Origin: Takakia lepidozioides | Taxonomy: Eukaryota > Plantae > Bryophyta | DNA length: 64,000 bases | NCBI GenBank assembly: GCA_030704615.1 | Contig: CM060733.1 | Coordinates: 49,290,001-49,354,000, forward strand | Direction: 5' to 3' | In this document: piece by piece, positions 5,006-40,100 of the stretch | Layout: the number at the start of each line of letters is the position of its first letter | Position numbering within the stretch: the first letter of the stretch is position 1 | Made by a program: the position numbers and the translations under genes | The notes under the pieces: generated by a model | What the model saw: the letters and a program-made list of their open reading frames with translations, nothing else | Told to the model about the DNA's origin: nothing | Databases searched by the model: none

Positions 5006-5098
5006 TATAGCCAAGGGTGCATCAAGGCATATACGAGAGATATTACAGAAGAGAGTTTTGGTTATTGCCACATTAAAAAGAAATGAAAGACATGGGAC

Positions 5099-20344: not shown

Positions 20345-20946
20345 GTCCCATGTCTTTCATTTCTTTTTAATGTGGCAATAACCAAAACTCTCTTCTGTAA
20401 TATCTCTCGTATATGCCTGGGTTTTTTCAAGCTTCAATGCACCCTTGGCTATACTAAAGTCTCCGTTACCATATAACCATATGGCAAACAAGTCTGGAAA
20501 GCTGTTCTTGGTGTGAGTTTGATCCACAAAATATCCTTTGGAATCCAATTCTTTACCAGTACAAGCTCTTCATGCATATGAGTATAAACATTCACCTTTC
20601 TTTCCTCCCAGCCTTCAAACTCTACTCGCTTAATGGATAGCAATGCTATCACATAAACCAGTGTTGGTAACCAACGTGCTCTTCCTCTACAGGCCACCTG
20701 ATAAATCTTTATCACTCCTTTCTCCAGACCCCAGGGTCAGCATCATGCACTCTCTTAAGAATGTTTTCTTTACAACCGTCTGGCAATTCCAAAACCTCTG
20801 AAGAATCGTTTGGACAATCTTTCCTTCTCAGTTTCACAAGGAATTTGATTCACATCAAATTCTTTAATTCTCCAACCACCATGATCCCACCAGATGCCTG
20901 TCACATCTGGTTGTTCATGACCCAGTTCCCCAGTATGGTCGCCAAA

Positions 20947-21864
20947 TGTCGCGCGGCTTTTACTCACCCATCCCTTCGCTATCCGAGGCGGAAAACTCCA
21001 AGATAGAAGAGTTGGAAATCTCTAAGTACTCAGCCCGCTCAGAACAATCAGTCATGACCTACAGCTAGTGTCATGGGGGTGTTTCCTATTTGTTTTCCTT
21101 CCGCATTCATGTAGCTAGTTACCTTACTGTGGTAATTAAGTATCAGTTTGCTTCATCAATCTATCGGATTCCATCAACTCATCCATTCATTCCACAGCTT
21201 CACTCAGATCTCTCTACACAGTGTGAGTATGAAGTGTATCAGATTAATATCTATCAAGTATCAGGCTGAAGCCATGGAGTCTCTAATCTGCTCTACATAC
21301 AATTCTACTGCTGCATTCATTAAGCATCAACAGATCCTCCCCTACTCCCTGCTCTCCATCTTTCTGCTCAGAGATACGCTCTCTCTCCTCCTTCTCCCAG
21401 TGATGTCCGAAGTCTTCCCCCAAGAAGTGCTCCTCCCCTCCTTCCAAGTGATTCCCCCAAGTGCTCCAAGAATCATCCCCTTTCAGTCCTTGCTCCTTTT
21501 TCCTACCGTTGTTCTAACCGTTTCCTCACTAAACCGTCGTCCGTGAACTAACATGTTCCATTCGCAGGTGTTGTTCCCCACAGTCGTTCCATGTCCTGCT
21601 ATCCTGTCCCTATGGTCGTGACAGCTGTGTCAAGCTGTGACTGGCTGTGTGAAACTGTGACGGGATGTGACTGGCTGTGTGGCTGTGTCGGCTGTGACGG
21701 GCTGTGTTGGCTGTGATGGCTGTGTGTGGCTGTGACGAGCTTGTGTTGACTTTGTCTGGCTGTGTCGGCTGTGTGGGCTGTGACGGGCTATGTAACCCCC
21801 TCCTAAAGTGCGCTGCTATCACCCCTAAGGCTCCTGTGGTCTCATCTGTGCAAAATTAGGGTAC
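20947..21864 (-). repeat. Main part of A2 5' LTR (first 51 bp lie at 34065-34115)
   Basis: Homologous to the A LTR; split by B2 with GTAC duplicated. Confidence 0.92.
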
Positions 21865-23859
21865 TGTAGTTGAATGCAGGGAGTGACATTACATTTGTTT
21901 ACCGTAAGACCCTGCATCACTACAACGGGAGTGCCCGTTGTACAACTGCAGAAGGGATATATCCCTGCATATAGGTAATTTCATGGGCACACTGAGCTTA
22001 TGCTTTGCCAGGAGAAAAAATGGCTAAGTCATGACAGTGCGTATTTTCATCCACGCGCATGAACGTTTTCATCACTGGTGCTTAACCTAAAATCACGGGT
22101 TGAGGGGTGACGTCGTAGCAGCTGCTGCGAGCAGTGGTGTTGGCAATGGCCAGCCTGTGTTGGGAGGTGTACCTACGTTGTGGGACTCTGCTTGGTTTTG
22201 AGAGCGGCATTAAGTGCTTCTGCTTGGTATTATGTGTAAGGGAAAGCGGTGCCGCTTCTCTCGTATTGATGATCAATTCCTGGAGTAGGAGCATGTAAGA
22301 AGAGCGGCGCACCACCGCTGTTGCCATTGCCTTGAAGACAACAGTTATGGGCAGATGAGCAAGCAAGGAAAACGGCCAGCTGCCGGAAGCACAAGGAATG
22401 AGGTGGGCACAATCAATGGAGGGGATGAGGCATGTGAAGTGCTGGCTTGTATATCATCTCAGGTTCTCTGTCATCAAGCTTCTAGCTGCTTTTGGTGTCT
22501 TCTTGTTATAGGACCAGGTCAATTCGTAGAAAGAATTGCATAGAGTAATTTAGTTGACAAGCCACAGGATGTTCCAAGGGATGAAGAGGAGCCATCATGG
22601 CATGATAAAGACTGGAATCAAGACAAGGAGAAAAGGTTTAAGTGGCTGCTGACAGGCGATGGCGAGGTGCCACCTTGACAGGCAGACCCACCGCTTCACT
22701 AGAGGATAAAAACAGATAAGTCTGTAGACTGGGGGCTTCTTTTGGGGAGAAACTTAGAAATTGCTTTTTGTAGATTTAGGACTGCATCTTGGTAGAAGAG
22801 AAAAGGTGGAGACATGTGATAAGGAAAGCTTTTTGGAAATGGAATGGAGACTCTGGACTTCAAACCAGAACATGGAAATGATGGATGCACCGATGTTGTG
22901 GTGTCAGTAAGAGAAATGAGTGAAGAGAGAGAGAGAGAGACTGTTTGTCACTGAAATCAGAATGGTCACTGTTGTCTTCATTCTTGCATCTTGTTTCAGT
23001 GTTATAAACCTGCACACAATGCTGCCGTGGGTAGTGATGCACTGGAACCAATGTAGATCTAGCTTGTTTGCTTGGAGAGATCAAATGAGGGTTAGCTGGA
23101 ACTGTTGAAAACATAGAAAGGATAAGGTGATTTCAGTATGGTGTTCGGATATGAACAACTGCGTTTCACAGTTGAAGGGAAAAGAGGGATGTTGGGGTAT
23201 TTGGTTGAAACTTGAAGAAGGGATGAGAGCTGTTTGGGCAATGGGTTCTTTGGAAAAAGGTAGTGTGAAGGGCTGAACATTGACAGAGAGAGAGAGAAAC
23301 AGAGAAAAAAGGACAAGAGGGAGAGAGGGAGAGAGAGACTGATGAATGGATGGTTGTGTCTTGAGAGACCGAGGATGACTTCAAGGCTGGCTACACTGGA
23401 TGCTTGGCAGAGTGTGCATTTGCATTACATGATAGATGTGCTGCTGTGAAGAAGTGAGGAGCCTGTAGACATAGACAGAGATAGAGAAACAGACGAAAAA
23501 GGGAAAAGAGAGAGAGAGAGAGAGAGAGAGAGAAAACGGGATTTGGGAAATGAGAGAGCTGCTCAGCAAAAGGGCTGATGGGGGGGGGATGGCCAATTTG
23601 GGGAGATGAGATGAAGAAAACCTGAACCCTGAAAGAAACCAGTGCCTCTGCAGGTCAAGAAGATCTGAGCTGCCTTCTCCTAAATCGGGGGCTGCTATTT
23701 CATGAGCGGCATGAGCATGAGCGGAAAAAAAAAAAAATCCATGAGCAGACCATTGTTAAGTCCACGGAAATAGGGTTAGGAGGCACGGAAATAGGGTCAT
23801 GTGAAGTTGGAATGTGGCACCAGTGGACTTGAAATGCAACATTTTATTGCATTTACTTG

Positions 23860-25033
23860 CCGAAAATGGCTAAGTCCCAGATCTGACTAGGCCGGGAACT
23901 GGAAAAATGACGCCGAATTTCCGATTTTGGTGCCAGTCAGATCTGGGACTTAGCCATTTTAGGCCCCGAACTAAAACAATGGCGTTTTTTTTTTTTTTCG
24001 GTGTCATTTTACTAGTTCGGGGCCTAAAATGGCTAAGTCCCAGATCTGACTGGGCCCGGAACTGGAAAAATGGCGCCGAATTTCCGATTTTGGTGCCAGC
24101 CACCCTAGGGACTTAGCCATTTTCGGCCCTGAAAGTACCCACTGGCTATGCCTCTGCTTTCAAAAAACATGTGGTCAAACAAAAGTTGAGCCAATTGAAG
24201 TCGCTCTAGTACTTGAGATGGAGAGTGGGTGAGGTGGTCTGTATGTGGAGTCTTTTAGCAAAGGTGCCATTGGCTTGACTTTATAACGTGATAGAATGGT
24301 TTCTCCTCTTTTCACCATTTCCGTATCACTAGAAGAAGACCTGCTTACATCTATAAGTGCAAGGTGTTAGCATAGTTAACACTTGTGTGTGGAGAGAGCT
24401 TGATAGATAGCTCTTAAGTTACAAGCTGTTGCAGGGTTTGCAAGAAGAAAGTCTTGTGGTTTATGTACAAGAGGAGGTCTTCAAGAAGAGCATCATTGAA
24501 AGTTTGAGAGCTTGTGAAGAAGCTCTTGTTCTGCAAGTGTTGTAGGGTTTGAGGAGTTCAAGAAGAGCTCGGGTGTTAAGGAAGCAAGTGGTGCATGTGT
24601 GGAGTATGGTTTCAGCTTGTGGGAGTCTTCAACTTCCATTTTTCCAGTTCGGCCGAAAATGGCTAAGTTCCAGATCTGATAGGGCGCGGAACTGGAAAAA
24701 TGGTGTCGAATTTCCAGTTGCGGTTCCAGCCATCGTAGGGACTTAGCTATTTTCGGGGCCCGGAACTGGAAAAATGGCGCCATTTTTCCATTTCGGGGCC
24801 GAAAATGGCTAAGTCCCAGATCTGACTGGGCCCCGAACTGGAAAAATGGCGCCGAATTTCCGATTTTGGGTGCCAGTCAGATCTGGGACTTAGCCGTTTT
24901 CGGCCCCGAACTGGAAAAATGGCGTTTTTTTTTTTTTTTTTTTTGGCGCCATTTTTCCATTTCGGGGCCGAAAATGGCTAAGTCCCAGATCTGACTTGCA
25001 CCAAAATCGGAAATTCGGCGCCATTTTTCCAGT
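23860..25033. repeat. MULE subterminal repeat arrays in both orientations, interrupted by a unique segment at ~24130-24635
   Basis: Recurring AAAATGGCTAAGTCCCAGATCTGAC and GAACTGGAAAAATGGCGCC plus their reverse complements. Degenerate copies at 29100-29285. Confidence 0.9.
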
Positions 25034-25034
25034 T

Positions 25035-26047
25035 ATGCAGGTAATTCGAAGAGCGGATGGATGGAAATCCGGCGCCGGATTTCCATCCGCCAGCTAGGTC
25101 GGCGCGCAAAATTTCCGTCATGCAGGTAATTCGAAGAGCGGATGGATGGAAATCCGACACCGGATTTCCATCCGCAAGGTTGGTCGGAGAGCGGATGGAT
25201 GGAGATCCAGCACCGGATTTCCATCCTGCAGGTAAGTGGAATCCCGGATGGATGGAAATCCGGCACCGAATTTCCATCCTGTAGATAATTCGAATCCCAG
25301 ATGGATGGAAATTCGGCGCCGAATTTCCATCCTGCAGGTAATTCGAATCCCAGATGGATGGAAATTCGGCGCCGGATTTCCATCCAGCAGGTAAGTGGAA
25401 TCCTGGATGGATGGAAATTCGGCGCCGAATTTCCGTCCAGCAGGTAATTCGAATCCCGGATGGAGGGAAATTCGGCGCCGAATTTCCGTCCAGCAGGTAA
25501 TTCGAATCCCGGATGGACGGAAATTCGGCGCCGAATTTCCGTCCAGCAGGTAATTCGAATCCCGGATGGATGGAAATTCGGCGCCGAATTTCCATCCAGC
25601 AGGTTACTAGAATCCCGGATGCATCGAAATCCGGCGCCGAATTTCCATTCGCCAGGTATTTCATCGCTGAGAATTACCTTCCTGCAGGTAATTCTGAGCG
25701 AGGAATTACCTTCCTACCTTCGTCGATAAGAATTACCTGCAGGAAGGTAATTCATCGCTGAGAATTACCTGCAGGAAGGTAATTCTCAGCGATGAAATAC
25801 CTGGCGAATGGAATTCGGTGCCGAATATCCATACGCCAGCGATCCGACTTACCTGCTGGATGGAAATTCGGCGCCGGATTTCCATCCATCCGAGATTCAA
25901 CTTATCTGCTGGATGGAAATTCGGCGCCGAATTTCCATCCACCCGGGATTCTAATTACCTGCAGGATGGATATGCGGCGCCGGATTTCGATCGATCCGGG
26001 ATTTCAGTTACCTGCTGGATGGAAATTCGGCGCCGAATTTCCATCCG
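25035..26047. repeat. 53-bp tandem array with palindromic core, arranged as a large inverted repeat
   Basis: Unit GATGGATGGAAATTCGGCGCCGAATTTCCATCCWGCAGGTAATTCGAATCCCR (period 25300 to 25353). Orientation flips across the perfect arms 25651-25695 and 25761-25805. Confidence 0.92.
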
Positions 26048-26760
26048 GGGGCTGGTCTCTGTCGGAGAGGTGCCGGCCTCTCCGCCGCTCTGTTGGATAT
26101 TCGGTGCCGAATTTCCGTCCGGCGGTTGAAATATGACGGCCAGGTGCCGACCTCTCCCCCTCCCCAACCGCATTGGAACGGGCCCGGATTGAAATTCGCC
26201 GCCGTTTTCCCATCTGGGGAGGTTTTTATGTCGGCCAGTTTTCAGTCTGACACCCCGACAAGACTTCCTTGGGGGGGCCCGGATGGAAATTCGGCGCCGA
26301 ATCTCCATCCAAGGGATGCTCTCTATCGAACACGTGCCGACCTCTACGCCCGAGGCGACTTCATCCGGGCGTCCCCTGTTCGATATTCGGTGCCGAATTT
26401 CCGTCCGGGGGTTGAAATGTGACGGCCAAGTGCCGGCCTCTCCCCCTCCCCGACTGCATCCGAACCGCCCCGGATGGAAATTCGGCGCCGTTTTTCCATC
26501 TGGGGATGTTTTTATGCCGGCCAGTTTTCGGCCTGACCCCCCGACACGACTTCCTTTGGGGGGCCTGGATGGAAATTCGGCGCCGAATCTCCATCCAGGG
26601 GATGTTCTCTGTCGCACACGCGCCGGCCTCTGCGCCCGAGGCGACTTCATCCGGGCTTCCCCTGTTGGATATTGGGTGCCGAATTTCCATTCGGGGGTAG
26701 TAATGTGACGGCACGGTGCCGGCTTCTCCCCTTCAGCCGTCATCATCCGGACGGCCCCCC
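26018..26760. repeat. Higher-order repeat (~290 bp, three palindrome-plus-linker subunits, ~2.5 copies)
   Basis: The same palindromic core recurs every ~75-105 bp and the linkers repeat every third unit. Confidence 0.8.
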
Positions 26761-26993
26761 ACTTTCTGACTACATACCGTTGGCAGTTATTGCGCAAAGA
26801 CCAGGGGCCGCATTCCGGAGACAAGGTTCATTAACACTCTGACTGTGGATTTTTGAGATAGTTGGCTCCCTGGATTTGGATCAGGCTTCGTCGCTCGGAC
26901 AAATCGGCATCGCATTCATTCCCATCGCTGCACCCCCTTCTACCAGGGAGCTTCCCCGCACTCCATCCTGGGAGTCTTGTGTGCACATCTCCC

Positions 26994-29081
26994 ATGGCGG
27001 AAAACCCGAGCGCTACAGTGTACTGCCCTCCTCACGAGCATAGAGCTTCATTTCCGTGCAGAGGGGACACCTGCCGGGTGATGGAGAAATATTTGTGCGT
27101 TCGATACCACCTGAAACCGGGGTCGGTTTTTTTGGAGGAGGAAAGGAAGGACTCTAACGGCCTTGTTGTCGAGAGTATTGTTGTGCTCCACGATGATTTC
27201 GGCGATGGCAGGGAATGGCGAGTTCCACCATTGGACAGCGTCATATACAGGGCTGTTGGGGACTTCATTTGCCCGCCAAATGCACCTTCTATCCTGGCGC
27301 CTTCCACGAAACAATCCGCGAATCAGAGAGTGGCTACCTCAAAGAGAGAAGTCCGCAACGAAGTAAATCCAGAGCCGAACCCATCCATGCAGACGAGCCA
27401 GAACCGGGTTGTTCACAACCTGTCCGACTCAGACGAGGTCATGGAAGTTTCGAGGTCGTCTTGGAGATTAGGCAAGTCCTCAATGGACGTCAGTGGAGGA
27501 GGGAGTCATATTCCCAGCACGAGCACCGCAGTTCGATCTATTCTTGAAATTCTGCGAGGGCTTCACCTGGAGGGACACCGGTCGGAGCTGGCCGGGCTGG
27601 ACTACAGCAAGTTTGCAATTAAATCGGTTACATGCCTTCCCGCCGACGTCGACGGTAATATCTTCTTTGAGTTCCCTCCTCGGGCGGACTACTCGAGGGC
27701 GTCCGGAATGTTGACAGATATGGATAGAAAACATGACGGTCATCCTTGGTGCGTTACCAAAACCACCAGCATGAAGATGCTCGATGGTGTGCGGGTGCGC
27801 TACGTTGTTTGTGCGGGCGCGTTGCGGTGTTTCTCCCCAACTTGCTTCCACTTTAAATCAAGAGGTCACAGGAACGAGACTGATTGGACAGGCACAGCTC
27901 ATCAACCATTTCGAGCTCAGGAGAAGGTTCCGAACTCCACATTTAAGTGTGCGCATTGCAAAGAACCACCACACTGCATGTCTGTTTGTAATGCCAAGCA
28001 GTTCTATGTGTTGCACCGTTTCCCTGACCTCACCCGAGCTTGCATACACGTTGGTTCCCATTGTCACAAATTGGCGAGGGGGAACTCGCGGGAGGCTGCC
28101 CACGAAGCAGAGCAGCTCGTTCAGGAGGAGGTTAAGTTGAGACCGGGTGCCAAACCCAAACAGATACAGCTCCAAGCCGCCCATAAGATGGCATTGGCCA
28201 GAATTATGTCGGAAGACGGCTCCGATAGAGTTCCTCTCGACGAGAAGGAAATGGAGGCATTGCTGGAGTCGGTGTCCCACGTATGTTCACCGAATGTCCG
28301 AAACCACATTGTCTCATGCAAACAGAAAATTGGGCGTGGCTCGGATATGCACTCCATTCTGGAGGTGAAGCGACGATGTGGATATGACTACATTCATGGA
28401 AGTCGGTTTCCAGGACAAGGGACTGAGGCAGATCGTTGTTTCGTATTCAAAATGTCCACGTGTGGACGTGGCAGCGGCGTCGAACTGGTCGACAGGATGA
28501 CGAGTAGGAACTTGTCAAACAGTTGGGTCATGTTCGACCATATCAAGCGAATTACAAATCACCAGTGGGTGACAATGGGTGCACATGTCTACGACACCCA
28601 CTGCAGGATGCTAATGACAATTGCTATTTGTGAGATGAAAGGAGAGGACACACAATCGGAGATGCTTCTTTGGCAAGGAATAAACGAACAGATGGCCAAG
28701 GCGGGATTGCCCCCTCCGAATTTCCGTGGTTTCATGGCGGACAACGCACAAGCAAATTGGGCTGCTATCCGAAGGGTGTACGGGCAAGACCCCAATGTTC
28801 CCATGGAAGGCAATGAGAGATCTTGTGGGTTCCATTTTCTGCAGAGCCTTTCGCAGTACACAACCAGGCTCGTGGCGCCAGATTTCAGAGAGGAGCACAG
28901 TTCCATGTGCCTTGCGTGGAAGCGCGTTCCGACCTTGGATGATGCAGAGACACAGTTTGCATGCATACGGGCTTGGTGGACATCGTTAGGTGCTGTAAGG
29001 AAATCAGACGAGGGAACAATGGTCAGTTGGCTAGCATGGTGGCATTATCGTTTCCTCCAATTCGGCGACTATATGCGGGAG
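26994..29081 (+). CDS. MULE-type DDE transposase with GCM/WRKY-like zinc domain; C-terminus apparently missing
   Basis: HDGHPW..YVVCAGALRC..C..CAHC..C..IHVGSHCH zinc domain; catalytic-type motifs WVMFDH and FMADNA; CGFH (CxxH). After ...DYMRE a GT donor-like site at 29082 leads into repeat DNA. The ORF stays open to 29408 but no TN..ES-type third acidic motif is seen. Confidence 0.82.
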
Positions 29082-29928
29082 GTGATTTGCACGTCCAAAC
29101 ATGCTAAGTCCGAACTGGCTAAGTCCGAACATGCACTGGAAAAATGGCGCCGAATTACCTGTCATGAGGGGACCTATAGCCGCGGAATTCGGCACCATTT
29201 TTCGCCAGAGAGACCTATTACCGCGAAATACGTCGCCGTTTTCCAGATTACGGACCATATTACCGCGAAATTCGGCGCCATATTTGCACATGTCGCTGGG
29301 AATTGGCATGAGCGGAAGACGAAATATCATGAGCACAACTGTCAAAACTGCAATTTTCCCTTCAAGGGGCCGAATAATATATTTGTTTTTCCTGACACAT
29401 TGCATTAAATTATTGTTTTTTTATTGTTTTTTATTTTCAAAATTTGTACTTCTGCTCATGAAAACCGATTGTCTTACTACTCCGCTCATGCCGCTCATGC
29501 TCATGAAATAGCAAACCTCTCCTAAATCTGTGTCACCATTACAAAAGGGGATTTCCGACGTGTCACTGCTCAAGGGGGCTTCACATAAAGGGTCATGTTT
29601 ACCGCTGCCATTGGGCTGCTTGCATCATAGAAAAGATCACGCCAACACTGTTGGCACCGTGATCATAGGGCCAGGCTGTTGTATAGAAGTAGAACCGAGA
29701 GCAAGAACAATTCAAAAACTCCCCATCCATGTCTTCTCTTCCGCTGCGGCGTGGATGAGGATTCCGTAAACTCTGATCACGAACGAACCTGAAGGAAAAC
29801 CCATATAGCCGTGTGACGATGGTTGGACAGAGAAAGAACGCTCCTTTCCCTTGCTTGGACAATCAACTGGGGGGAGGGGAGGACCACAGCTTTAGGATTA
29901 ACCAGAAGGGGATTCACGCCCCTTCTTT

Positions 29929-29939
29929 TGGTATCAGAG
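29929..29939 (+). promoter_or_regulatory. tRNA-iMet primer-binding site of B2 (copy 1, truncated)
   Basis: TGGTATCAGAG directly after the LTR sequence ...CCCCTTCTTT. Confidence 0.85.
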
Positions 29940-29988
29940 TAATGTCACTCCCCTGCATTCACACTACATATGTAGTGTGTCTCCCTTT

Positions 29989-32900
29989 TTAAGTGTCAGG
30001 GTCCTCACTGACCACCTTCACTGGCTGACCACCCACTGGTGGTATGAATGGTTTCAAATCCCGCCTACTTCTTACCCATTCCTTGTTTGCCCCATCTCTT
30101 AGCCTGCATTTGCGTGCAGCTTCCCTTCCAGGATCATAAGGTACTCCCAACAGGTACATTGTGTTAATTCCCCTTCTGTTTCTGCTCCAGATATCTTGGA
30201 GAGGTCCGTTCATAATATTGTTTTTGATTGTCATGCCTTGGCCTTCAGCAAAGGGAAACCCCTCTCTACTCATAATCTTCATGGCCACTTCTGTCTGGCT
30301 GGTGCGAGCAGGGTTGTTCTCAAACTGACACCACCACCTGGTTTCCATGCAACTCATCATGCCAATTTCATGGCCTTCTTCCCTGGCCACAGTTTTCGTG
30401 CTCCATCCCTGAGCTTGCATCGTCGTCCAGCCTCTCTTGTTTAAGTGACAGCGTCCCGGCTGTCCATTTGTTCCGCCGGCCAGAGCAAATCCAATTTGTG
30501 ACAATGCCTTCTTCCTCTTCTTGTAGTTCATGCCAGGCAGGTCCTGATCTCCTTCCCACACAAACCAGCGTTTCCCAATTTTGTTGTTGCTCCCTGGCTC
30601 CTTGTTTTGAATCGCAGCTACCACTTGTGCTCCCATCGACACTCGCACCTTTCGTACTGCCTCATTTTCTGCATGCAGGTTGTCCTCAACAGCAGGCTGC
30701 AATTTCATTTGCATTGTTGGTGGCAAGTCATGGGCAACCCTCTGGTTACCATGCCTTCCTTCTTCCCTTTCAACCAGCCTGCCCTCTTTAAGAGATTCAG
30801 GGTGGTGTATGCCTTGCAAGTAGAAGTGATCGTGACATGGGTAGGCTTCATAGCCTCCCACATCAACTGCCCATCCATCTCCTGAGCCTGAATTTCACAA
30901 CCATGCTGGGCATATCCTGAAATCATTGCACTCCATGAGAGCAGATTGGGTGGCATACCTTCCTGCTCCATTTGTTCAAACAGTTGCAGGGTCTGTGCTT
31001 CAGAGCCATGCTGGGCATAACCTGCAATCATTACTCTCCATGACCCCACTTTTCTGTGAGACATATTGTCACACACTTGTTGTGCACCCTTCATGCTCCC
31101 ACGTTTGGCATACCTGTCAACAATGGCAGTCTCCATAATGATATCTGGTGCAATACCAGATTTGATACTGTCACCATGGACCTCTTCGCCTTTTACCAGG
31201 TCTGCCAGGTTCGCACATGCATTCAACACACACAGGAACGTCACCTGTTTGGGCTTCTCTCCTTCATTTCCAGCATCTGTAGAAAGCTCATTGCCTCTAT
31301 ATTGAATTACCTCTGCTGGTATATCTCTGACTCCTTCAGGTATGTCCACAGAAATTACACGCCAAAGGCAGCTCCCCAAACTTGCTCCCCTCTTGAGCTG
31401 GTGTCTTGGTGTGTATGCAGGTCCTTTCTCTGCCCATGTTTGCTTCCATCTTCCACCAGGGCCAGCCATTCTTTTACAACCTTGCTTCAGATTGCTGAGC
31501 TGCATATACCATATGTATTGGCAGCACAAAATCGTCATTAGCATGGCCTGCTCCAACCAGTTCTTCACTGTTTGCCATAGGCACCTGCAGCACATAATTA
31601 CCATCAAGATAGCATGTCGTATCCATGCCTTAGCACCCTTTCTCCGTCCTTGACACTTCGGTACACAGCTTGTGAACCTGAGTATGCTGCAGTCAGCAAT
31701 GAATGATCTCCTTGTGCCTTGCCACCACTTTTGACACCATTTGCCCTCTTTTCTTGGCGGATCTATTCCCGGAAGAACCTCCTCATTGTCATGCATCTTC
31801 TCTGTGTGACCCTCTTCCACATAATGCAAGCCTTCGCATGTCCAAACTCTCAGCTTCCACACATGGTTTTCGGCGCCTTTGCATGCCCTAATGACTTCTC
31901 CACTTTTCATGTCATCATGTGCAAGCTTAGGTGTTGTCAGGTCTCGATCTTTCAGGCTCCTTTTCACCACTTCTTCCATCACTGGAGTGATCTGTAAGCT
32001 CTTTCCTCTTAGACAGATTTCTTCTCCAATCTGCAGGGCCTCTCCCTTGCATGAATCCTCCAACACTTGATACTCCATGTTCCCTTCATCTCTCCCAACA
32101 TTTGTCAATGGTCCAACATCCAAAGAAGCTTCTATTTCCTCTTCTTTGTCCTGACTTAGGGTACCTGGTGTCCCCATGAACATGTCATTGACTGATGACG
32201 TACTCGACTCCAAAAGTAGCTGGAGCCGTTGCACATCTGCCTGAAGATGCTTGTTATCACCACGGAGCTTATCCACGCACTCTTATCCACGCACTCTTCT
32301 TTGGCCCCACTCAGCTCTCGGTCAGCTTTCTCGAGGGCCAACCGTAAATGTTGATTTTCCATGACTAGGTTCTCCACCTGGACTTCAGTTTCTCTCCGTA
32401 GGACTAGGGCAGCTACAACGTCATCTCGTGCATCTTTCACCTTTAATTCCTTCTCCACCAAGTCTGTTCTTAATCGAGATGCAACTTCTCTCAGCTCCCC
32501 AAGTATGTTTTGATCTAGGTGTGCATCTTGATCTATATCCTGTCTAGTTTGAGCAAGCAATGTACACTCTTCCTCCACCCATTCCATCAGATCTGTCCAA
32601 GACTCCTTGACATCTTCCTCTCTTATGACACTCACTTCACCGGTTGTACCACTATTGCTTGGGGAGTTGGTGGTATCATGCCCAAACTCCCCAGGTATGT
32701 CTTGCCCTACATGTGCCCTTGTATAAGACCTTGGGAACTGCACAAGAACTTGCAATCTAGGTGTACACTCTTCATTGACACCTGATTGATCCTCTATTGA
32801 ACAAAAGATGTCTTCCATGATCTCTCCTTCCTCATCACAAAACACATTCACAATGTTTGTGCCAAGAGAGCTTACACATTCGCACTCCATCCTTTTGCTG

Positions 32901-33535
32901 CTCTTCGATTCCCATTGTTCAAACATTCCACAGCATGAATCTTGCATTCCACATGTTCCCACTTGCAGCCCCAGCCGGTGATTCTTTTCACTTCGGATCT
33001 GATTCTGTCTTGATGGACATGCAGTGCAACACTCTACTTGCTGCCTTGTGCTGTTCAAGCTGAGAACTCGAGGAAGCATTGCATGGACTTCGCTGATTTG
33101 GTTCTTCTCCCTAAAGCACCTCCGTGACATGGTTTTGTGATCTGGTATAGGTTCATGATCAATAGAACTCACAGGTGTGAACCTGTTGTGAGTATCCTTC
33201 TCAATCAGAGACAATTTCTCTTCCATTCCTGTAGCATACTCTTCCACATTTGTATCTATCCCATCAAACTTCCTTGCTAACATCACTTTACTCTTACTTG
33301 ATTGACCTTCTTCTCCAAATTTCAAGATTATGGCTACTTGAAAATCATGCCAGTTCATGGACCTTGGTTTTGGCATTCGATGCCAAGTGTCAGCCCGTGC
33401 CTTGAGATTCAGCCTTGCCGATATAAATAACTTGTGCTCGTCAAAGCTCCGCCTCTCACCATCCCTTTTCAGATTCTGGATCCAGCTGCAAACATCCTCA
33501 TCCTTCTTTCAGTAAAATGGAATGTTAGTCACCAT
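29989..33535 (-). pseudogene. B2 polyprotein: Gag capsid-like, coiled coil, hydrophobic repeat, PLS-class PPR motifs, degenerate C-terminus; no RT/INT
   Basis: ATG at 33535 gives MVTNIPFY*KKDEDVCSWIQ..ARLNLKARADTWH..NWHDFQVAIILKF (gag-like). A 14-bp tandem duplication (32268-32295) explains the first frameshift. PPR motifs at ~31290-30770. A second frameshift lies near 30800 and the ORF stops at the PPT. Confidence 0.8.
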
Positions 33536-33600
33536 TGCTCGCAAATCACTCTCCTATCTTGCTACACTGAAAACCTACATCTCTCAGACAAGATCCAGCG

Positions 33601-33614
33601 TGGCTCTGATACCA
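33601..33614 (-). promoter_or_regulatory. tRNA-iMet primer-binding site of B2 (copy 2, in inverted segment)
   Basis: TGGTATCAGAGCCA, matching the plant initiator tRNA-Met 3' end, upstream of the gag-like ATG. Confidence 0.9.
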
Positions 33615-34120
33615 AAAGAAGGGGCGTGAATCCCCTTCTGCCTTCTCCTAAATCTGTGTCACCATTACAAAAGGGGATTTCCGACGTGTCACTGCTCAAG
33701 GGGGCTTCACATAAAGGGTCATGTTTACCGCTGCCATTGGGCTGCTTGCATCACAGAAAAGATCACGCCAACACTGTTGGCGCCATGATCATAGGGCCAG
33801 GCTGTTGTATAGAAGTAGAACCGAGAGCAAGAACAATTCAAAAACTCCCCATCCATGTCTTCTCTTCCGTTGCGGCGTGGATGAGGATTCCGTAAACTCT
33901 GATCACGAACGAACCTGAAGGAAAACCCATATAGCCGTGTGACGATGGTTGGACAGAGAAAGAACGCTCTTTTCCCTTGCTTGGACAATCAACTGGGGGG
34001 AGGGGAGGACCACAGCTTTAGGATTAACCAGAAGGGGATTCACGCCCCTTCTTTTCACACTACAGTACCCCACAGATCCCTTATAAGTGTCTAAGTCCCA
34101 GACAGTCCTCTAACAAGGGT

Positions 34121-35587
34121 GCATCAGGTGCAGCCCCAGCCAAGAAGAAACAATGATCAGGACCACTATGGTAGGTCTGGTGGTTATAACAATGGCATGG
34201 AAGGGAGAGGTAATTCAAGAGGAAATTACCAAGGAAATTCCAGAGGCAACTATTAGGGTAATCCAAGGGGGAATTACCAGCCCGGGAATCAGGATTACAG
34301 AAATAATCCAAGAGCAGACCAAGGGCGAGGACCCAATGGTGAAGAACTGTGTTACTATTGTAATCAGCCAGGACATCGCAAGGCAGCCTGTTCATTCTGG
34401 ATTAGACACCAGAATGAGATGAGAGCTCATGTGAATGGGGGCCCAGTGGTGGTAGCTCACATGGTTAGGCCATGTGTTGTACCAGAAGTAAGTACAATGA
34501 TAGTAACAAGAAGCAAAGCCAAACTAATACCTCCAGTAGTTGAGGAAGATGATGATAATGAAGGTGGCAGTGATATGCCTGAAGATGATGAGGCTTGGAG
34601 AGATGAGAAGGAACTGCACAAGGAAGTGGCAGATACCATAAGGGAAATGCAAAAGAGTACTGATATTCCTGTGGCAGATTCCTCTGATTCTGATGGAGAA
34701 GAAGAAGTGAGTGAGGATGAAAGGAAGAAAGAAGCTGCAGACATGCAAAGTAATGAAGGGACTTTGGCTGAAGTAATATGCCAGACCAAAGCAGAGATTA
34801 CCATTGGACAACTATTGGCTGTGGCACCTTATTGTAGGCACAGGCTGTATCAAGCAATCAATCGAATTGCCCAGGAGACAGGAAACACAGACCTGAACAG
34901 CAAGGTGACCAGTTATAATGTGAAGCCGGAAGGGCGAGAAACAGTCATGGACTTTGATGATTCTATGCCAGTAATCCAATTGAGAATTGGAAGCACAGAA
35001 CTAACTGATGTACTGATAGATGGAGGCTCTGGAGTAAATATCATGACAGACCAATTAAGAAAGAAGCTTGGCCTAAGTAACATGAAACCAGCCCCATTTA
35101 CAGTAACAATGGCAGATCAAAGAAATGTACAGCCATTGGATTAATAAGAGGAGTTAAGATACAGATACAGAAGATGATCTTTATGATCACAGTAACTGTG
35201 TTGAAGATGGATGAAGTCATGGAGGCTTACTCCTTATTATTGGGACCTCCGTGGCTGAAACAGGCCAGGGTATTCCATGACTGGAATTCTCAGTTACTAA
35301 CCGTGCATAATGGGATGCACGAGATACAAATTACCACAAAGAAATCTAGTAGATTACCTGCTACGAAAAGACCTCGAGGGGTCAGAGAGTATGACTGGAG
35401 AGGATGACTGGATGAGGAACAGGAAGCTACCCTGTTTGCGGCACACCCAGAGTGGGAGCAGGTTGCAGAGATGCGGCTGGAAGGCCTAAGTTGTTTAAGG
35501 GGTATCTGCTGTGGTGTAGTGTCAGCAACACCAATTGAAGAGGAAACCAGCAGTTACCCATCACATTTCTATGAAGAAAGAGAAGGA
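34121..35587 (+). pseudogene. gag-pol: A1 gag C-terminus (third knuckle) and protease
   Basis: Continues VHQVQPQPRR; contains CYYCNQPGHRKAAC and VLIDGGSGVNIM. Confidence 0.9.
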
Positions 35588-36559
35588 TGTTAGAGGACTG
35601 TGTGGGACTTAGACACTTATACGGGATCTGTGGGGTACCCTTAATTTTTGCACAGACTAAGACCAACAGGAGCCTTAGGGGTGACAGCACCGCACTTTAG
35701 AAGGGAGTTACACAGTCCGTCACAGTCAGTCACAGCCAACACAGCTCGTCACAGTCTGACACAGCCGACACAGCTCGTCACAGCCGACACAGCCCGTCAC
35801 AGCCAGTCACAGCCGTCACAGTCAGTCACAGCTCGACACAGTCGCACAGCCAGTCATAGCTTGACACAGCTGTCACGACCATAGGGAACGGATAGCAGGA
35901 CAGGGAACGACTGGGGGGAACAACATCTACGAATGGAACATGTTAGTACACTGATGACGGTTAGTGAGGAAAACGGTTAGAGCAACGGGTAGGAAGATAT
36001 AGCGAGGAGCGAGGACGGGAAAAAGATGACTTCTTGGGGGAATTCTGGGAGAGGGGGGAGAGATCACTTGGAGAGGGGACTTCGGACATCACGGGAGGAA
36101 AGGAGGAGAGAGCGCATCTCTGAGCGGAAGGAGAGAGAGAGCACAGAGTAGCAGGATGACGATCTGTTGATGCTTAATGAATGCACGCAGTAGGGTTGTA
36201 ATGTAGAGCAGATTAGAGACTCCATGGCTTCAGCCTGATACTTGATAGATATTAATCTGATACATACTTCATACTCACACTGTGTAGAGAGATCTGAGTG
36301 AAGCTGTGGAATGAATGGATGAGATGATGGAATCCGATAGATTGCTGAAGCAAACTGATATTTAATTACCAACAGAAAGGTAACCAGCTAACATGAATGC
36401 GGGAAGGAAAACAAAATAGGAAACAACCCCATGATACACTAGCTGTAGGTCATGACTGATTGTTCTGAGCGGGCTGAGTGCTTAGAGATTTCCAACTCTT
36501 CTATCTTGGAGTTCCCGCCTCGGATAGCGAAGGGATGGGTGAGTAAAAGCCGCGTGACA
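35588..36559 (+). repeat. 5' LTR of A3
   Basis: TGTTAGAGG...CGTGACA followed by the PBS. Confidence 0.92.
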
Positions 36560-37147
36560 TTTGGCGACCATACTGGGGAACTGGGTCATGAACAACCAGA
36601 TGTGACAGGCATCTGGTGGGATCATGGTGGTTGGAGAATTAAAGAATTTGATGTAAATCAAATTCCTTGTGAAACTGAGAAGGAAAGATTATCCAAACGA
36701 TTCTTTCAGAGGTTCTTGGAATGGCCAGACGGTTGTAAAGAAACCATTCTTAAGAGAGTGCATGATGCTGACCCTGAATGGGGTCTGGAGAAAGGAGTGA
36801 TAAAGATTTATCAGGTGGCCTGTAGAGGAAGAGCACGTTGGTTACCAACACTGGTTTATGTGATAGCATTGCTATCCATTAAGCGAGTAGAGTTTGAAGG
36901 CTGGGAGGAAAGAAAGGTGAATGTTTATACTCATATGCATGAAGAGCTTGTACTGGTAAAGAATTGGATTCCAAAGGATATTTTGTGGATCAAACTCACA
37001 CCAAGAACAACTTTCCAGACTTGTTTGCCATATGGTTATATGGTAACGGAGACTTCTAGTATAGCCAAGGGTGCATTGAAGCTAGAAAGAAACCCAGGCA
37101 TATACGAGAGATATTACAGAAGAGAGTTTTGGTTATTGCCACATTAA
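36452..37147 (+). CDS. Extra 5' ORF of family A (231 aa), unknown function
   Basis: Open frame from within the LTR through the PBS to 22 nt before the gag ATG (37170). Confidence 0.6.
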   Translation: MTDCSERAECLEISNSSILEFPPRIAKGWVSKSRVTFGDHTGELGHEQPDVTGIWWDHGGWRIKEFDVNQIPCETEKERLSKRFFQRFLEWPDGCKETILKRVHDADPEWGLEKGVIKIYQVACRGRARWLPTLVYVIALLSIKRVEFEGWEERKVNVYTHMHEELVLVKNWIPKDILWIKLTPRTTFQTCLPYGYMVTETSSIAKGALKLERNPGIYERYYRREFWLLPH

Positions 37148-37169
37148 AAAGAAATGAAAGACATGGGAC

Positions 37170-40100
37170 ATGAGTGATGAAAGAGAAGCTAGACTCTAGA
37201 GATATTCAGCAAAAAGAGAAAGCTATCTGAAAGCTAATTATCCATATCTTTGGGAGAGAGGAATCATCTGGACCTCTCACACCATTAAGATCAGAGAGTA
37301 CATCACCCATACCGGAAGAACTAGAGTTGGATGCCACTCATTTTTCTTTGCAAGAAAGATTAAGGGAATTGGTACGGGAAGAAGATCAATCACGAGGTGA
37401 AAGATCTGAGGTACATCCCTGGATAAAAGATTTGACAGAAATCTTTGATAAGAGTTGGCATGGAACACCAAAAGCAGGAACTCCAGTTTCTGAAGCGGAA
37501 GGTGAAGAAGGAGGAGAGGATGTGGCAGAGCCAACGGAGAGTTCAGACTCTCCAACACCATTGCAGTTGAGTTACATGAGTGAAGAAGAAACCCAAGGGC
37601 AGAACTTGGAGGATGAAAACAGAGAGAAGAAATTGGAAGAGAAAGAGTATGAAGAAGTAGACCCAACAGCTGAGGTTGAGACTACAACCAGGACATCCCA
37701 ACCCGTTGGACCTGGATCAAGTGGAGCACTTGGATCACAGGCCAACGAAGGTGTCGGCTCAGGGGGATCAGGCGGGCTGCCTGGATCTGGCTCTGGGGGG
37801 ACAGGGAGTGTGGGAAGTAGTGCAACTGAAGCTGGGAATACTGTGAATATCGTGGGGCCAGTAGCAAGGAGTACTCAAGGGCCACCACTTGGTGGAAGAT
37901 CCACCACAACAAAAACAGGTCCAGAAGGACCAGCACCAGCAAGGGTGCCAGCACCTGTCAGTGGGCAGAAGGTAGGGCCACAGATGGCGTTACAACCAAC
38001 ACGGGCAAAACCACCTTTTCCAATATATTCAGGAAAAAAGGATCCCAATGTACACATTAGCCAATTTGAGCACATGTGTATAGTGAACAATGAGAATGAC
38101 GATGATGCCAAGATGAGATTGTTTCCTTGTTCACTTATCAAGAAAGCAAGTGAATGGTATGCAAGATTCCCTGATAATCATTTCCTAACCTGGAATGGCT
38201 TGAATACAGCATTCCGAAATAGGTTCAGGACAAGTAAAACTGAGGATGAAGTGTATGGAAGTTTACAACAGTTAAAGCAAAAGAAGCATGAAACTGTTGA
38301 GGAGTATATGGAAAAGATAGAATTGATGATGAAAAAGCTGGCTGCAGTACCAGCACCAGGTTTATAGAAGACTTGGTTTGTGAGTGGACTAAGACCAGAG
38401 TTGCAAAAGAAAGTGGATATGTTACCCCATAATACAGTGGAGGAGGCATTTGAAACTGCAAACAGAATTGAGCAATTGGGAATGCTCAGGAGAGAGAAAA
38501 GGGATGATGAGGACTCTGAGGATGAGTCAGATGAAGAAGAAGAGCAAGAACTAAAAAGGAAGAGTAAGAGAAAGGAGAAGTTGAAGAGGGATAACTATGA
38601 GAAAAGATTGGAAGAAATCTTGAAGAAGTATGCCACAGAGGCTGCAACACATTGGAGGAAGGGTGTATGGTGTGCAAAGTGCCAGAATGAAGGCCATACC
38701 ACCACAGAATGCCACATGAAGGAGAAACACTGTACTATCTGTAAAATGGATAACCATTATACTGAGAATTGTTACTACAACAGAAGGACAGCTGCAAGAG
38801 AACCTAGGCAAGTAAGGGTGCATCAGGTGCAGCCCCAGCCAAGAAGAAACAATGATCAGGACCACTATGGTAGGTCTGGTGGTTATAACAATGGCATGGA
38901 AGGGAGAGGTAATTCAAGAGGAAATTACCAAGGAAATTCCAGAGGCAGCTATCAGGGTAATCCAAGGGGGAATTACCAGCCCGGGAATCAGGATTACAGA
39001 AATAATCCAAGAGCAGACCAAGGGCGAGGACCCAATGGTGAAGAACTATGTTACTATTGTAATCAGCCAGGACATCGCAAGGCAGCCTGTTCATTCTGGA
39101 TTAGACACCAGAATGAGATGAGAGCTCCTGTGAATGGGGGCCCAGTGGTGGCAGCTCACATGGTTAGGCCATGTGTTGTACCAGAAGTAAGTACAATGAT
39201 AGTAACAAGAAGCAAAGCCAAACTAATACCTCCAGTAGTTGAGGAAGAGGATGATAATGAAGGTGGCAGTGATATGCCTGAAGATGATGAGGCTTGGAGA
39301 GATGAGAAGGAACTGCACAAGGAAGTGGCAAATACCATAAGGGAAATGCAAAAGAGTACTGATATTCCTGTGGCAGATTCCTCTGATTCTGATGGAGAAG
39401 AAGTGGGTGAGGATGAAAGGAAGAAAGAAGATGCAGACATGCAAAATAATGAAAAGACTTTGGCTGAAGTAATATGCCAGACCAAAGCAGAGATTACCAT
39501 TGGACAGCTATTGACTGTGGCACCTTATTGTAGGTACAGGCTGTATCAAGCAATCAATCGAATTGCCCAGGAGACAGGAAACACAGACCTGAACAGCAAG
39601 GTGACCAGTTATAATGTGAAGCCGGAAGGGCGAGAAACAGTCATGGACTTTGATGATTCTATGCCAGTAATCCAATTGAGAATTGGAAGCACAGAACTAA
39701 CTGATGTACTTATAGATGGAGGTTCTGGAGTAAATATCATGACAGACCAATTAAGAAAGAAGCTTGGCCTAAGTAACATGAAACCAGCCCCATTTACAGT
39801 AACAATGGCAGATCAAAGAAGTGTACAGCCATTGGGATTAATAAGAGGAGTTAAGATACAGATACAGAAGATGATCTTTATGATCACAGTAACTGTGTTG
39901 AAGATGGATGAAGTCATGGAGGCTTACTCCTTATTATTGGGACCTCCGTGGCTGAAACAGGCCAGGGTATTCCATGACAGGAACGCTCAGTTACTAACCG
40001 TGCATAATGGATACACGAGATACAAATTACCACAAAGAAATCTAGTAGATTACCTGCTACGAGAAGACCTCGAGGAGTCAGAGAGTATGACTGGAGAGGA

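What the first reader, a model, noticed from the sequence alone, without database searches (positions are those of the whole stretch)
30705..33535. LTR retroelement encoding a Gag / coiled-coil / PLS-PPR fusion instead of Pol
Seen: PPR motifs at ~31290-30770 (KPKQVTFLCVLNACANLADLVKGEEVH; AIVDRYAKRGSMKGAQQVCDNM; SWRVMIAGYAQHG..LQLFEQMEQEG; SWSAMISGYAQHG; KPTHVTITST..ESLKEGRLV). Removing one stop, one 14-bp duplication and one frameshift gives a single ~1170-aa ORF from just after the PBS to the PPT, with no RT or integrase. Known: PLS-class PPRs are sequence-specific RNA binders used in organellar RNA editing, are mostly intronless, and are greatly expanded in ferns, lycophytes and hornworts. 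Inference: the element captured PPR sequence and kept it in frame. It could be a vehicle for PPR amplification, or PPR motifs could substitute for the nucleocapsid knuckle (none seen) in binding RNA.
Basis: partly seen in the sequence, partly recalled or inferred. Interest (0 to 1): 0.8.

Follow-up and report, generated by a model that had tools for sequence, protein, structure and literature searches.

The report
PPR fragment inside a retrotransposon ORF
A young LTR retrotransposon copy with no polymerase gene, in a land-plant genome, carries about 190 residues of a PPR (organellar RNA-editing factor) gene in frame within its own long, otherwise orphan reading frame; this looks like ordinary host-gene capture, and the PPR piece shows decay rather than a new function.

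Summary
The PPR motifs are real (Pfam PPR E about 1e-13). They lie on the minus strand at about 30729-31277. They sit inside a 4.5-kb unit bounded by two 98.8%-identical direct repeats, with a perfect tRNA-iMet-type PBS and a polypurine tract.

Almost the whole interior is covered by three stop-free stretches of 450, 525 and 301 codons. No dinucleotide shuffle reached these lengths (0 of 1000). There is no protease, RT, RNase H, integrase or CCHC knuckle.

"Gag" rests on one sub-threshold Pfam hit. The coiled coil is supported by a confident long-helix model. Everything except the PPR tract has no relative in 1.84 billion proteins.

The PPR tract is a short piece from the 3' end of the repeat array. 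It has no E or DYW domain. Its specificity and near-invariant residues are almost never seen in real PPRs.

No other copy and no donor gene could be found, because the host genome is not in any collection. The other repeat-bearing unit in the window has a different, non-coding interior.

Verdict: a non-autonomous LTR element with a transduced, decaying PPR fragment, of the kind described for maize Bs1.

The parts
33639..34064 (-). 5' LTR ('B' repeat), 426 bp, with TGTAG...AGGCA termini
   Evidence: Alignment of the three copies defines both ends. Self-BLAST gives 98.4-98.8% identity to 29518-29929 and 7042-7468.
33615..33638 (-). 24-nt spacer between the LTR end and the PBS; it is the reverse complement of LTR nt 12-35
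   Evidence: Sequence read; inverted match 33604-33658 to 29885-29939.
33603..33614 (-). Primer-binding site TGGTATCAGAGC (complement of the 3' end of plant initiator tRNA-Met, from my own knowledge)
   Evidence: It is the only perfect match in the window.
32159..33508 (-). ORF piece 1, 450 stop-free codons. An ATG at 33535 lies upstream of an in-frame stop at 33509-33511. The piece has no known relatives.
   Evidence: No relative was found.
33218..33412 (-). Gag-like stretch (residues 33-97 of piece 1)
   Evidence: Pfam Retrotrans_gag scores 14.3 bits, E 0.047, profile positions 5-72 of 97. The best, non-significant, local BLASTP alignment to the gag of the neighbouring gypsy element falls in that protein's Retrotrans_gag domain.
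32200..32608 (-). Charged segment free of Gly and Pro, predicted as one long helix (coiled-coil-like); it spans the frame break
   Evidence: AlphaFold2 single-sequence model: helix 2-139, mean pLDDT 88. Composition and heptad signal.
32269..32296 (-). 14-bp tandem duplication (GAGTGCGTGGATAA, two copies) at which the reading frame changes
   Evidence: Sequence read; three-frame translation.
30708..32282 (-). ORF piece 2, 525 stop-free codons: 331 orphan residues followed by the PPR tract, with the stop at 30705-30707
30729..31277 (-). Captured PLS-class PPR tract of about 183 residues, read as L, S and P motifs, a second P-type motif and an L2/S2 remnant. No E or DYW domain was detected.
   Evidence: Pfam PPR E 1.2e-13. 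Coverage by 120 real PPR proteins. Alignments.
29992..30894 (-). ORF piece 3, 301 stop-free codons with no known relatives. It overlaps the end of piece 2 by about 190 nt in the -1 frame. Its stop codon TAA (29989-29991) overlaps the polypurine tract.
   Evidence: No family or homolog was found. No PPR similarity.
29980..29990 (-). Polypurine tract AAAAAGGGAGA
   Evidence: Sequence read.
29971..29979 (-). CACACTACA, the reverse complement of the first 9 nt of the LTR. It lies head to head with the 3' LTR, separated from it by TA.
29516..29968 (-). 3' LTR. It starts TGTAGTGTGAA. It carries a 29-nt insertion (29929-29957) that contains the reverse complement of the PBS. It lacks the terminal CA. 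No target-site duplication is present.

Best explanation
WHAT IT IS
This is a copy of a non-autonomous LTR retrotransposon on the minus strand, about 29516-34064. It has kept the cis signals for reverse transcription: LTRs, a tRNA-iMet primer-binding site and a polypurine tract. It has no protease, RT, RNase H or integrase, so it would have to be mobilised in trans by an autonomous element.

ITS READING FRAME
The interior is almost entirely one sense-strand reading frame, now in three pieces. It begins with a weakly Gag-like stretch and continues through a long coiled-coil helix and orphan sequence.

THE PPR TRACT
The frame contains about 183 residues copied from the 3' part of the repeat array of a host PLS-class PPR gene. 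The most likely route, which is inferred, is template switching onto a co-packaged host mRNA during reverse transcription, or recombination. This is the way maize Bs1 and many rice and sorghum LTR elements acquired host gene pieces.

The PPR tract is passenger sequence. It is too short to act as an editing factor and lacks the E and DYW domains. Its RNA-specifying residues have drifted to combinations that real PPR proteins do not use.

SHOWN AND INFERRED
- Shown: the anatomy, the PPR homology and its limits, the openness of the frames, and the absence of pol and of any relatives.
- Inferred: the capture mechanism, mobilisation in trans, and passenger status.
For: LTR ELEMENT SIGNALS
- Direct repeats are 98.8% identical, and the 5' copy has TG..CA ends.
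- There is a perfect 12-nt tRNA-iMet-type PBS, unique in the window.
- The polypurine tract is overlapped by the stop codon of the last ORF piece.

CODING INTERIOR
- The reading frames cover 3517 nt, 33508 to 29992, of the interior between PBS and PPT. None of 1000 dinucleotide shuffles reached 525 or 301 stop-free codons.
- All pieces show coding-like codon-position composition.
- No pol domain and no CCHC knuckle.
- Retrotrans_gag gives 14.3 bits at the expected N-terminal position. For this one pre-specified family, E 0.047 over 24,736 models corresponds to p of about 2e-6.

THE PPR TRACT
- Pfam E is about 1e-13, in one frame only.
- Its 3' end aligns to L2/S2, and nothing aligns to E1/E2/DYW.

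SIGNS OF DECAY
- Fifth/last residue pairs: (T,K) occurs in 0 of 414 S motifs, (R,N) in 0 of 701 P motifs, and (S,T) in 0.6% of P motifs.
- Scaffold residues M, C and F of the ..MYAKCG..VF.. pattern are replaced by residues seen in at most 0.24% of real motifs.
- Median similarity to real PPRs is 103 bits, against 178 for real windows of equal length; only 0.8% of real windows score as low.
- The best-preserved core sits at the 4th percentile.

PRECEDENT
Host-gene transduction by plant LTR elements is documented. Examples are Bs1 and the 672 rice and 1343 sorghum LTR-captured genes, among which PF01535 (PPR) is one of the most frequently detected domains (PMC7264820, PMC3726574).
Against: - No second copy and no donor gene could be examined, so capture is inferred from the mosaic structure alone.
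- The best database PPR matches are only 40-50% identical. That is the ordinary level between paralogs.
- The frames stay open across about 1170 codons even though the PPR residues have drifted. This could mean selection on the reading frame rather than mere youth.
- This copy is not a clean single insertion. There is no target-site duplication. The 3' LTR lacks its terminal CA and carries a 29-nt variant start. The PBS lies 24 nt from the LTR. LTR-to-LTR identity is no higher than identity to the third repeat at 7042-7468.
- The Gag assignment is below Pfam's threshold and has no homolog support. The structure model of that stretch is unusable (pLDDT 37).
Confidence: 0.62

Rival explanations
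1. The ORF is a working element protein, and the PPR-derived helical repeats have been co-opted. They might bind the element's RNA in place of a zinc-knuckle nucleocapsid, or the element might spread PPR-coding sequence around the genome.
For: - The PPR tract is in frame with 331 upstream codons and has no stop in 525 codons. All three ORF pieces are far longer than chance allows.
- No CCHC knuckle is present.
- The LTRs are young (98.8% identical).
Against: - Residues at the positions that specify the RNA base are non-canonical in all three code-bearing motifs, and near-invariant scaffold residues are lost.
- The tract is an outlier of low similarity among PPRs.
- With only 4-5 motifs, any target would be 4-5 nt long and would occur by chance many times in a 3.6-kb RNA.
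- There is no E or DYW domain.
- The only other unit with this repeat in the window lacks the segment.
- The copy itself is broken in at least two places.
Confidence: 0.07
2. The locus is not one insertion. It is either a recombinant between two 'B' elements or two adjacent units. Unit 1 would run 34064 to 29971 and end in a short inverted LTR start. Unit 2 would be truncated and begin at 29968. The PPR-bearing ORF would still be cargo of a B-type unit, but LTR identity would say nothing about its age.
For: - The LTR start forms a head-to-head palindrome (CACACTACA, TA, TGTAGTGTG) at 29971-29979 and 29960-29968.
- The 3' LTR has a 29-nt variant start that also occurs, inverted, at 9255-9283.
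- There is no target-site duplication, and the terminal CA is missing.
- LTR5-LTR3 identity (98.8%) is about the same as identity to the 7042 copy (98.4-98.5%).
- Unit 7042-9283 consists of one repeat, a body and an inverted 29-nt end, with a 3-bp duplication (GAG). Clean empty sites are seen in three gypsy copies.
Against: - The PBS sits next to the 5' repeat and the polypurine tract next to the 3' repeat.
- An ORF fills exactly the space between them. That is the classic single-element layout.
Confidence: 0.3
3. The 3.6 kb is host DNA, for example a decayed PPR pseudogene region, trapped between two independent insertions of the same repeat. It would not be the interior of an element.
For: - No target-site duplication.
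- The interior is unique in the window.
- The flanks on the two sides are unrelated: a 51-nt piece of a gypsy LTR on one side and an 848-codon ORF on the other.
Against: - The sense-strand frames start about 70 nt after the PBS and end inside the polypurine tract.
- PPR homology covers only about 550 of about 3600 nt, with no PPR similarity elsewhere in any frame.
- A Gag-like hit lies at the 5' end.
- The sense strand is rich in purines and in A, which in my experience is usual for retroelement sense strands.
Confidence: 0.06
4. The whole ORF is a retrocopy of one host mRNA encoding a coiled-coil-PPR protein, placed between LTRs by LTR-mediated retroposition. It would not be element sequence plus a captured fragment.
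For: - There is a single long sense ORF without introns.
- LTR-mediated retroposition of host mRNAs is documented (PMC5131818 and PMC4838847, listed).
Against: - The first 450 residues have no relative in 1.84 billion representative proteins, which include many plant proteomes.
- The N-terminus is Gag-like.
- The PPR tract starts and ends inside motifs and lacks both the N-terminal and the E/DYW parts of a PLS gene.
Confidence: 0.05

Closest known systems
Maize Bs1, a gene-transducing LTR retrotransposon (Elrouby and Bureau 2010, as cited in PMC7264820)
   Same: - An LTR element that has transduced sequences from host genes (as stated in PMC7264820).
- From my own recollection of the primary paper, which I could not read: Bs1 lacks a working pol, keeps a gag-derived 5' part and reads its host pieces in the sense frame as a chimeric ORF.
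   Different: - The cargo here is a PLS-class PPR fragment.
- Most of the ORF is orphan sequence with a long coiled coil.
- Expression and copy number are unknown here.
LTR-captured genes of rice and sorghum (PMC3726574)
   Same: - Host genes or fragments lie between the LTRs, PBS and PPT of full-length elements.
- PF01535 (PPR) is among the domains most often found in the captured proteins.
- Many captured genes are pseudogenes evolving neutrally.
   Different: - Those are angiosperm cases identified from annotated genes.
- Here the best PPR matches are from lycophytes, Ginkgo and ferns.
- Here the fragment is fused in frame to the element's own Gag-like ORF.
Non-autonomous LTR elements that keep gag but not pol, and LARDs (from my own knowledge: BARE-2 of barley; LARD as defined by Kalendar et al. 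2004)
   Same: LTRs, PBS and PPT are kept, pol is missing, and mobilisation in trans is expected.
   Different: - LARD interiors are non-coding.
- BARE-2 retains a clearly recognisable gag and pol remnants.
- Here gag is barely detectable and the interior is one long orphan ORF.
PLS-class PPR RNA-editing factors
   Same: The characteristic L, S and P motifs and the L2/S2 signature (LLGRAG-like) are recognisable.
   Different: - Only 4-5 motifs are present.
- There is no N-terminal part and no E1/E2/DYW.
- Code positions are non-canonical.

Membership tests
LTR retrotransposon | Two long direct terminal repeats of high identity | tested here: met
   412 nt at 98.8% identity.
LTR retrotransposon | TG...CA termini on both LTRs | tested here: inconclusive
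   The 5' LTR and the 7042 copy have TGTAG...AGGCA. The 3' LTR starts TGTAG but lacks the terminal CA.
LTR retrotransposon | tRNA primer-binding site just inside the 5' LTR | tested here: met
   A 12-nt perfect tRNA-iMet-type PBS lies at 33603-33614 and is unique in the window. It sits 24 nt from the LTR end, which is further than usual.
LTR retrotransposon | Polypurine tract just inside the 3' LTR | tested here: met
   AAAAAGGGAGA lies at 29980-29990, 11 nt before the LTR start.
LTR retrotransposon | Target-site duplication of 4-6 bp | tested here: not met
   The flanks are GGTAC and TTTGC/TGCTA.
LTR retrotransposon | Gag domain | tested here: inconclusive
   Retrotrans_gag scores 14.3 bits against a cut-off of 24.1. 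No homologs were found. The structure model is unusable.
Autonomous Ty1/copia or Ty3/gypsy element | Protease, reverse transcriptase, RNase H and integrase domains | tested here: not met
   Pfam found none in any ORF piece even at E up to 10. tblastx found no similarity to the gypsy pol in the same window.
PLS-class PPR protein | Tandem PPR motifs of P, L and S type | tested here: met
   Pfam PPR E 1.2e-13. Alignments to 120 PLS proteins.
PLS-class PPR RNA-editing factor | C-terminal E1/E2 (and DYW) domains after the S2 motif | tested here: not met
   A profile of 37 PPR C-termini matches only L2/S2. Nothing downstream matches in any of the six frames.
PLS-class PPR RNA-editing factor | Canonical fifth/last residue combinations in P and S motifs | tested here: not met
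   (T,K) occurs in 0 of 414 S motifs, (R,N) in 0 of 701 P motifs, and (S,T) in 0.6% of P motifs of real PPRs.
Gene-transducing LTR element (Bs1-like) | Host-derived sequence in sense orientation between PBS and PPT, with an identifiable donor gene elsewhere | tested here: inconclusive
   The sense orientation and position are met. No donor was found, because the host genome is absent from all collections.
Multi-copy element family that carries the PPR segment | The same interior present in other copies | not testable with these tools
   The interior is unique in the window. Nothing was found in the protein or contig collections.

The most novel reading that the evidence does not exclude
A lineage-specific family of pol-less LTR retrotransposons keeps a single long Gag-like, coiled-coil and PPR-derived protein under selection. 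The PPR-derived helical repeats would serve as an RNA- or protein-binding module of the particle. Alternatively, the family would scatter PPR-coding fragments that recombine with host PPR genes.
Probability: 0.06. Interest if true: 0.75.

Novelty: new member of a known kind. Interest (0 to 1): 0.3.

Why it matters
PPR genes are mostly intronless and have expanded greatly in some plant lineages, and retroposition has long been suspected as the cause. A retroelement caught carrying PPR sequence would be a concrete example of PPR sequence travelling through an RNA intermediate.

This copy shows that a PLS-type fragment can ride inside an LTR element and be read in frame with the element's own ORF. 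That makes it a possible source of chimeric ORFs and of PPR pseudogene fragments, which inflate gene counts in large genomes.

It does not show amplification of working PPR genes, and it does not show a new function for PPR motifs.

Tried and rejected
SEARCHES FOR COPIES, DONOR AND HOST (all negative)
- Exact look-ups of five window ORFs in the assembly index found nothing.
- A protein-pattern scan and an LTR DNA-pattern scan of the metagenome contigs found nothing.
- The host genome therefore appears to be in no collection. Copy counting, dN/dS and donor finding were impossible.

SEARCHES FOR RELATIVES OF THE NON-PPR PIECES
- Piece 1 and piece 3: word-index searches found nothing.
- Piece 1: full HMMER against 1.84 billion representatives gave 0 hits.
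- PDB sequence searches of piece 1, the non-PPR part of piece 2 and piece 3 gave only noise.
- The non-PPR part of piece 2 was not searched on its own in the large protein collections.

OTHER TESTS
- The AlphaFold2 model of the Gag-like stretch had pLDDT 37, so no fold search was run.
- I tested whether PPR homology extends into the upstream 331 residues, into piece 3, or into E/DYW remnants in other frames. It does not rise above shuffled controls.
The original frame aligns to L2/S2.
- I looked for a -1 slippery heptamer in the overlap of pieces 2 and 3. Only a near-match, CTTAAAG at 30791, is in frame.
- Rfam and tRNA scans of the window found nothing.
- Predicting a PPR-code target was not worthwhile. 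Three code-bearing motifs with non-canonical pairs specify nothing searchable.
- The Bs1 primary paper is not held in the library.
Full report
OBSERVATION

The region lies in a nest of plant retroelements. On the minus strand, two direct repeats (29518-29929 and 33644-34055) are 98.8% identical. Aligning them with a third copy at 7042-7468 defines a 426-bp LTR with TGTAG...AGGCA termini.

Downstream of the 5' LTR, after a 24-nt spacer, lies TGGTATCAGAGC (33603-33614). This is the only perfect match in the window. From my own knowledge it is the complement of the 3' end of plant initiator tRNA-Met, the commonest plant LTR-retrotransposon primer site. Upstream of the 3' LTR lies the polypurine tract AAAAAGGGAGA (29980-29990).

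Between these signals the sense strand is almost entirely open, in three pieces:
- Piece 1: 450 codons, 33508-32159.
- Piece 2: 525 codons, 32282-30708.
- Piece 3: 301 codons, 30894-29992.

None of 1000 dinucleotide-preserving shuffles reached the observed longest stretch. This holds both for the whole interior (525 codons) and for the last 929 nt taken alone (301 codons). The third-longest stretch of the whole interior was never matched either. All pieces show the purine-rich first position and the GC1 > GC2 pattern of coding DNA.

THE BREAKS

An ATG at 33535 is followed by an in-frame stop at 33509-33511. The change from the frame of piece 1 to that of piece 2 coincides with a 14-bp tandem duplication at 32269-32296, and coiled-coil-like sequence continues on both sides of it.

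- A profile built from the C-termini of 37 DYW-type PPR proteins aligns DGQLMWEAMKPTHVTITSTCKAYTTLNLLKRAGWLKGKKE, in the frame of piece 2 and without a gap, to the L2/S2 motifs.
- Pairwise alignments agree.
- Piece 3 has no PPR similarity above shuffled controls.

The PPR tract therefore runs to within about 7 codons of the stop of piece 2 (30705-30707). Piece 3 overlaps the end of piece 2 by about 190 nt in the -1 frame. Whether the two were once one frame, or two overlapping frames as in many gag/pol pairs, cannot be told from one copy. Only a near-slippery CTTAAAG is in frame.

I searched the three pieces apart. I did not build, print or search a joined or mended ORF.

WHAT THE PIECES ARE

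The PPR tract is unmistakable.
- Pfam PPR gives E 1.2e-13, and PPR_2, PPR_3 and PPR_1 are also above their cut-offs.
- 120 real PPR proteins cover 30729-31277 in one frame only and match nowhere else in the window.
- The best matches are lycophyte (Diphasiastrum), Ginkgo, conifer and fern PLS proteins at 40-50% identity. That is the ordinary level between paralogs, so no donor was found.
- I read the tract as an L motif, an S motif, a P motif, a second P-type motif, and an L2/S2 remnant. This is the last part of a PLS array.
- No E1, E2 or DYW was detected in any frame downstream.

No protease, RT, RNase H or integrase domain is present, even at E up to 10. There is no similarity to the Ty3/gypsy element next door. 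There is no CCHC knuckle.

'Gag' rests on one Retrotrans_gag hit of 14.3 bits (E 0.047, cut-off 24.1) at residues 33-97 of piece 1. Because this family was specified in advance, the single-model p-value is about 2e-6, and the hit lies where Gag should be. The best (non-significant) BLASTP alignment to the neighbouring element's gag falls inside that protein's Retrotrans_gag domain. I rate Gag as probable but not shown. A single-sequence structure model of this stretch was unusable (pLDDT 37).

The coiled coil is supported. Residues 301-440 of piece 1 fold as one helix with mean pLDDT 88. The segment has no Gly or Pro and is 34-49% charged.

Apart from the PPR tract, no relative turned up:
- Piece 1: none by word search or by full HMMER against 1.84 billion representatives.
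- Piece 3: none by word search.
- Piece 1, the non-PPR part of piece 2 and piece 3: nothing in the PDB.
- The non-PPR part of piece 2 had no search of its own in the large protein collections.

IS THE PPR TRACT FUNCTIONAL?

Evidence against canonical PPR function is fairly strong. I compared it with 701 P-type and 414 S-type motifs from the 120 real proteins.
- The element's fifth/last residue pairs are (T,K), found in 0 of 414 S motifs; (R,N), found in 0 of 701 P motifs; and (S,T), found in 0.6% of P motifs.
- The scaffold residues M, C and F of the ..MYAKCG..VF.. pattern are replaced by R (0 of 414), R (0.24%) and C (0.24%).
- As a whole, the tract scores a median of 103 bits against real PPRs, whereas equal-length real windows score 178. 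Only 0.8% of real windows score as low.
- The best-preserved 122-residue core sits at the 4th percentile.

These comparison sets were chosen by similarity to the tract, which if anything favours it. The frame is nevertheless open. This may reflect youth (LTR identity 98.8%) or selection on the frame as such. With one copy I cannot separate the two.

IS IT ONE CLEAN ELEMENT?

It is not quite.
- There is no target-site duplication, and the 3' LTR lacks its terminal CA.
- The 3' LTR has a 29-nt insertion after nt 11 that contains the reverse complement of the PBS. The same variant LTR start occurs, inverted, at 9255-9283.
- The spacer between the 5' LTR and the PBS is the reverse complement of LTR nt 12-35.
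- A reverse-complement copy of the first 9 nt of the LTR sits head to head with the 3' LTR.
- LTR-to-LTR identity is no higher than identity to the third copy.

That third copy begins a 2242-bp unit (7042-9283). The unit has a non-coding interior and an inverted 29-nt LTR start at its far end. It is flanked by a 3-bp duplication (GAG), and clean empty sites are seen in three gypsy copies.

This locus may therefore be a recombinant or a tandem of two units. Either way the PPR-bearing ORF lies inside a B-type mobile unit, so the cargo conclusion holds. The age estimate from LTR identity does not hold.

COMPARISON WITH WHAT IS KNOWN

Host-gene transduction by plant LTR retrotransposons is established.
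- Maize Bs1 has transduced sequences from several host genes (PMC7264820). My recollection of the primary paper, which is not held here, is that Bs1 lacks pol and reads those pieces in a gag-fused chimeric ORF.
- Surveys found 672 rice and 1343 sorghum LTR-captured genes. PF01535 (PPR) is among the most frequent captured domains, and many captured genes are pseudogenes (PMC3726574).

The present case is a further member of that kind. Its particular points are the probable non-angiosperm host, the in-frame fusion to a long orphan Gag-like and coiled-coil ORF, and the odd termini.

VERDICT

The two functional ideas (a vehicle for PPR amplification, or a nucleocapsid substitute) are not supported by what can be tested here. 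The decisive tests need the host genome, which none of the available collections holds.

Noticed in passing
window 7042-9283 (+), with a related stretch at 21864-23686 (inverted): This 2242-bp unit starts with a complete B repeat (7042-7468) followed by a degenerate PBS-like leader. Its 1.8-kb interior is non-coding and low-complexity, and it ends in an inverted 29-nt LTR-start variant (TIR TGTAGTGTGAA / TTCACACTACA). It is flanked by a 3-bp duplication (GAG) and sits exactly at the LTR/internal junction of a gypsy copy; three other gypsy copies show the empty site. A unit with only one LTR that still inserted as a unit is unusual.
   Followed up: partly
window 35587-44263 (+), 13027-21864 (-), 3561-6756 (+), 34115-35597 (+): Several 92-97%-identical copies and fragments of a large Ty3/gypsy element are present. 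Its LTR is about 690 bp, with Retrotrans_gag at 37327-38367 and RT/RNase H at 40807-41487. The PPR-bearing element abuts a 51-nt inverted piece of this element's LTR at 34065-34115.
   Followed up: partly
window 26862-29408 (+): An 848-codon ORF lies immediately beside the truncated end of the 3' LTR. It is Cys/His-rich, has no Pfam family and has no exact record in the assembly index. It may be a gene or a transposase-like protein of an uncharacterised element.
   Followed up: partly
window 23859-26758: A block of tandem and inverted repeats lies directly upstream of the 848-codon ORF. Periods are 53, 85, 95, 146 and 286 nt, many built on the palindromic core GGATGGAAATTCGGCGCCGAATTTCCATCC, and local GC is about 56%. 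It could be the subterminal repeat array of a DNA transposon.
   Followed up: no
window 30705-30894 (-): The PPR-bearing ORF and the last ORF overlap by about 190 nt in a -1 relation. The stop TGA of the former overlaps an ATG of the latter (ATGA). Only a near-slippery CTTAAAG at 30791 is in frame. This resembles a gag/pol-type overlap but is unproven.
   Followed up: partly
window 31560-31700 (-), residues about 215-260 of the 523-aa ORF: This hydrophobic stretch is rich in Cys, Trp and Met and has very low charge. It gave only a noise-level hit to a membrane protease family. It might be a membrane-like segment or sequence read in a non-native frame.
   Followed up: no
window 56345-56859 and 62854-63380: A pair of direct repeats 78% identical and about 6.5 kb apart may be the LTRs of an older element.
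   Followed up: no
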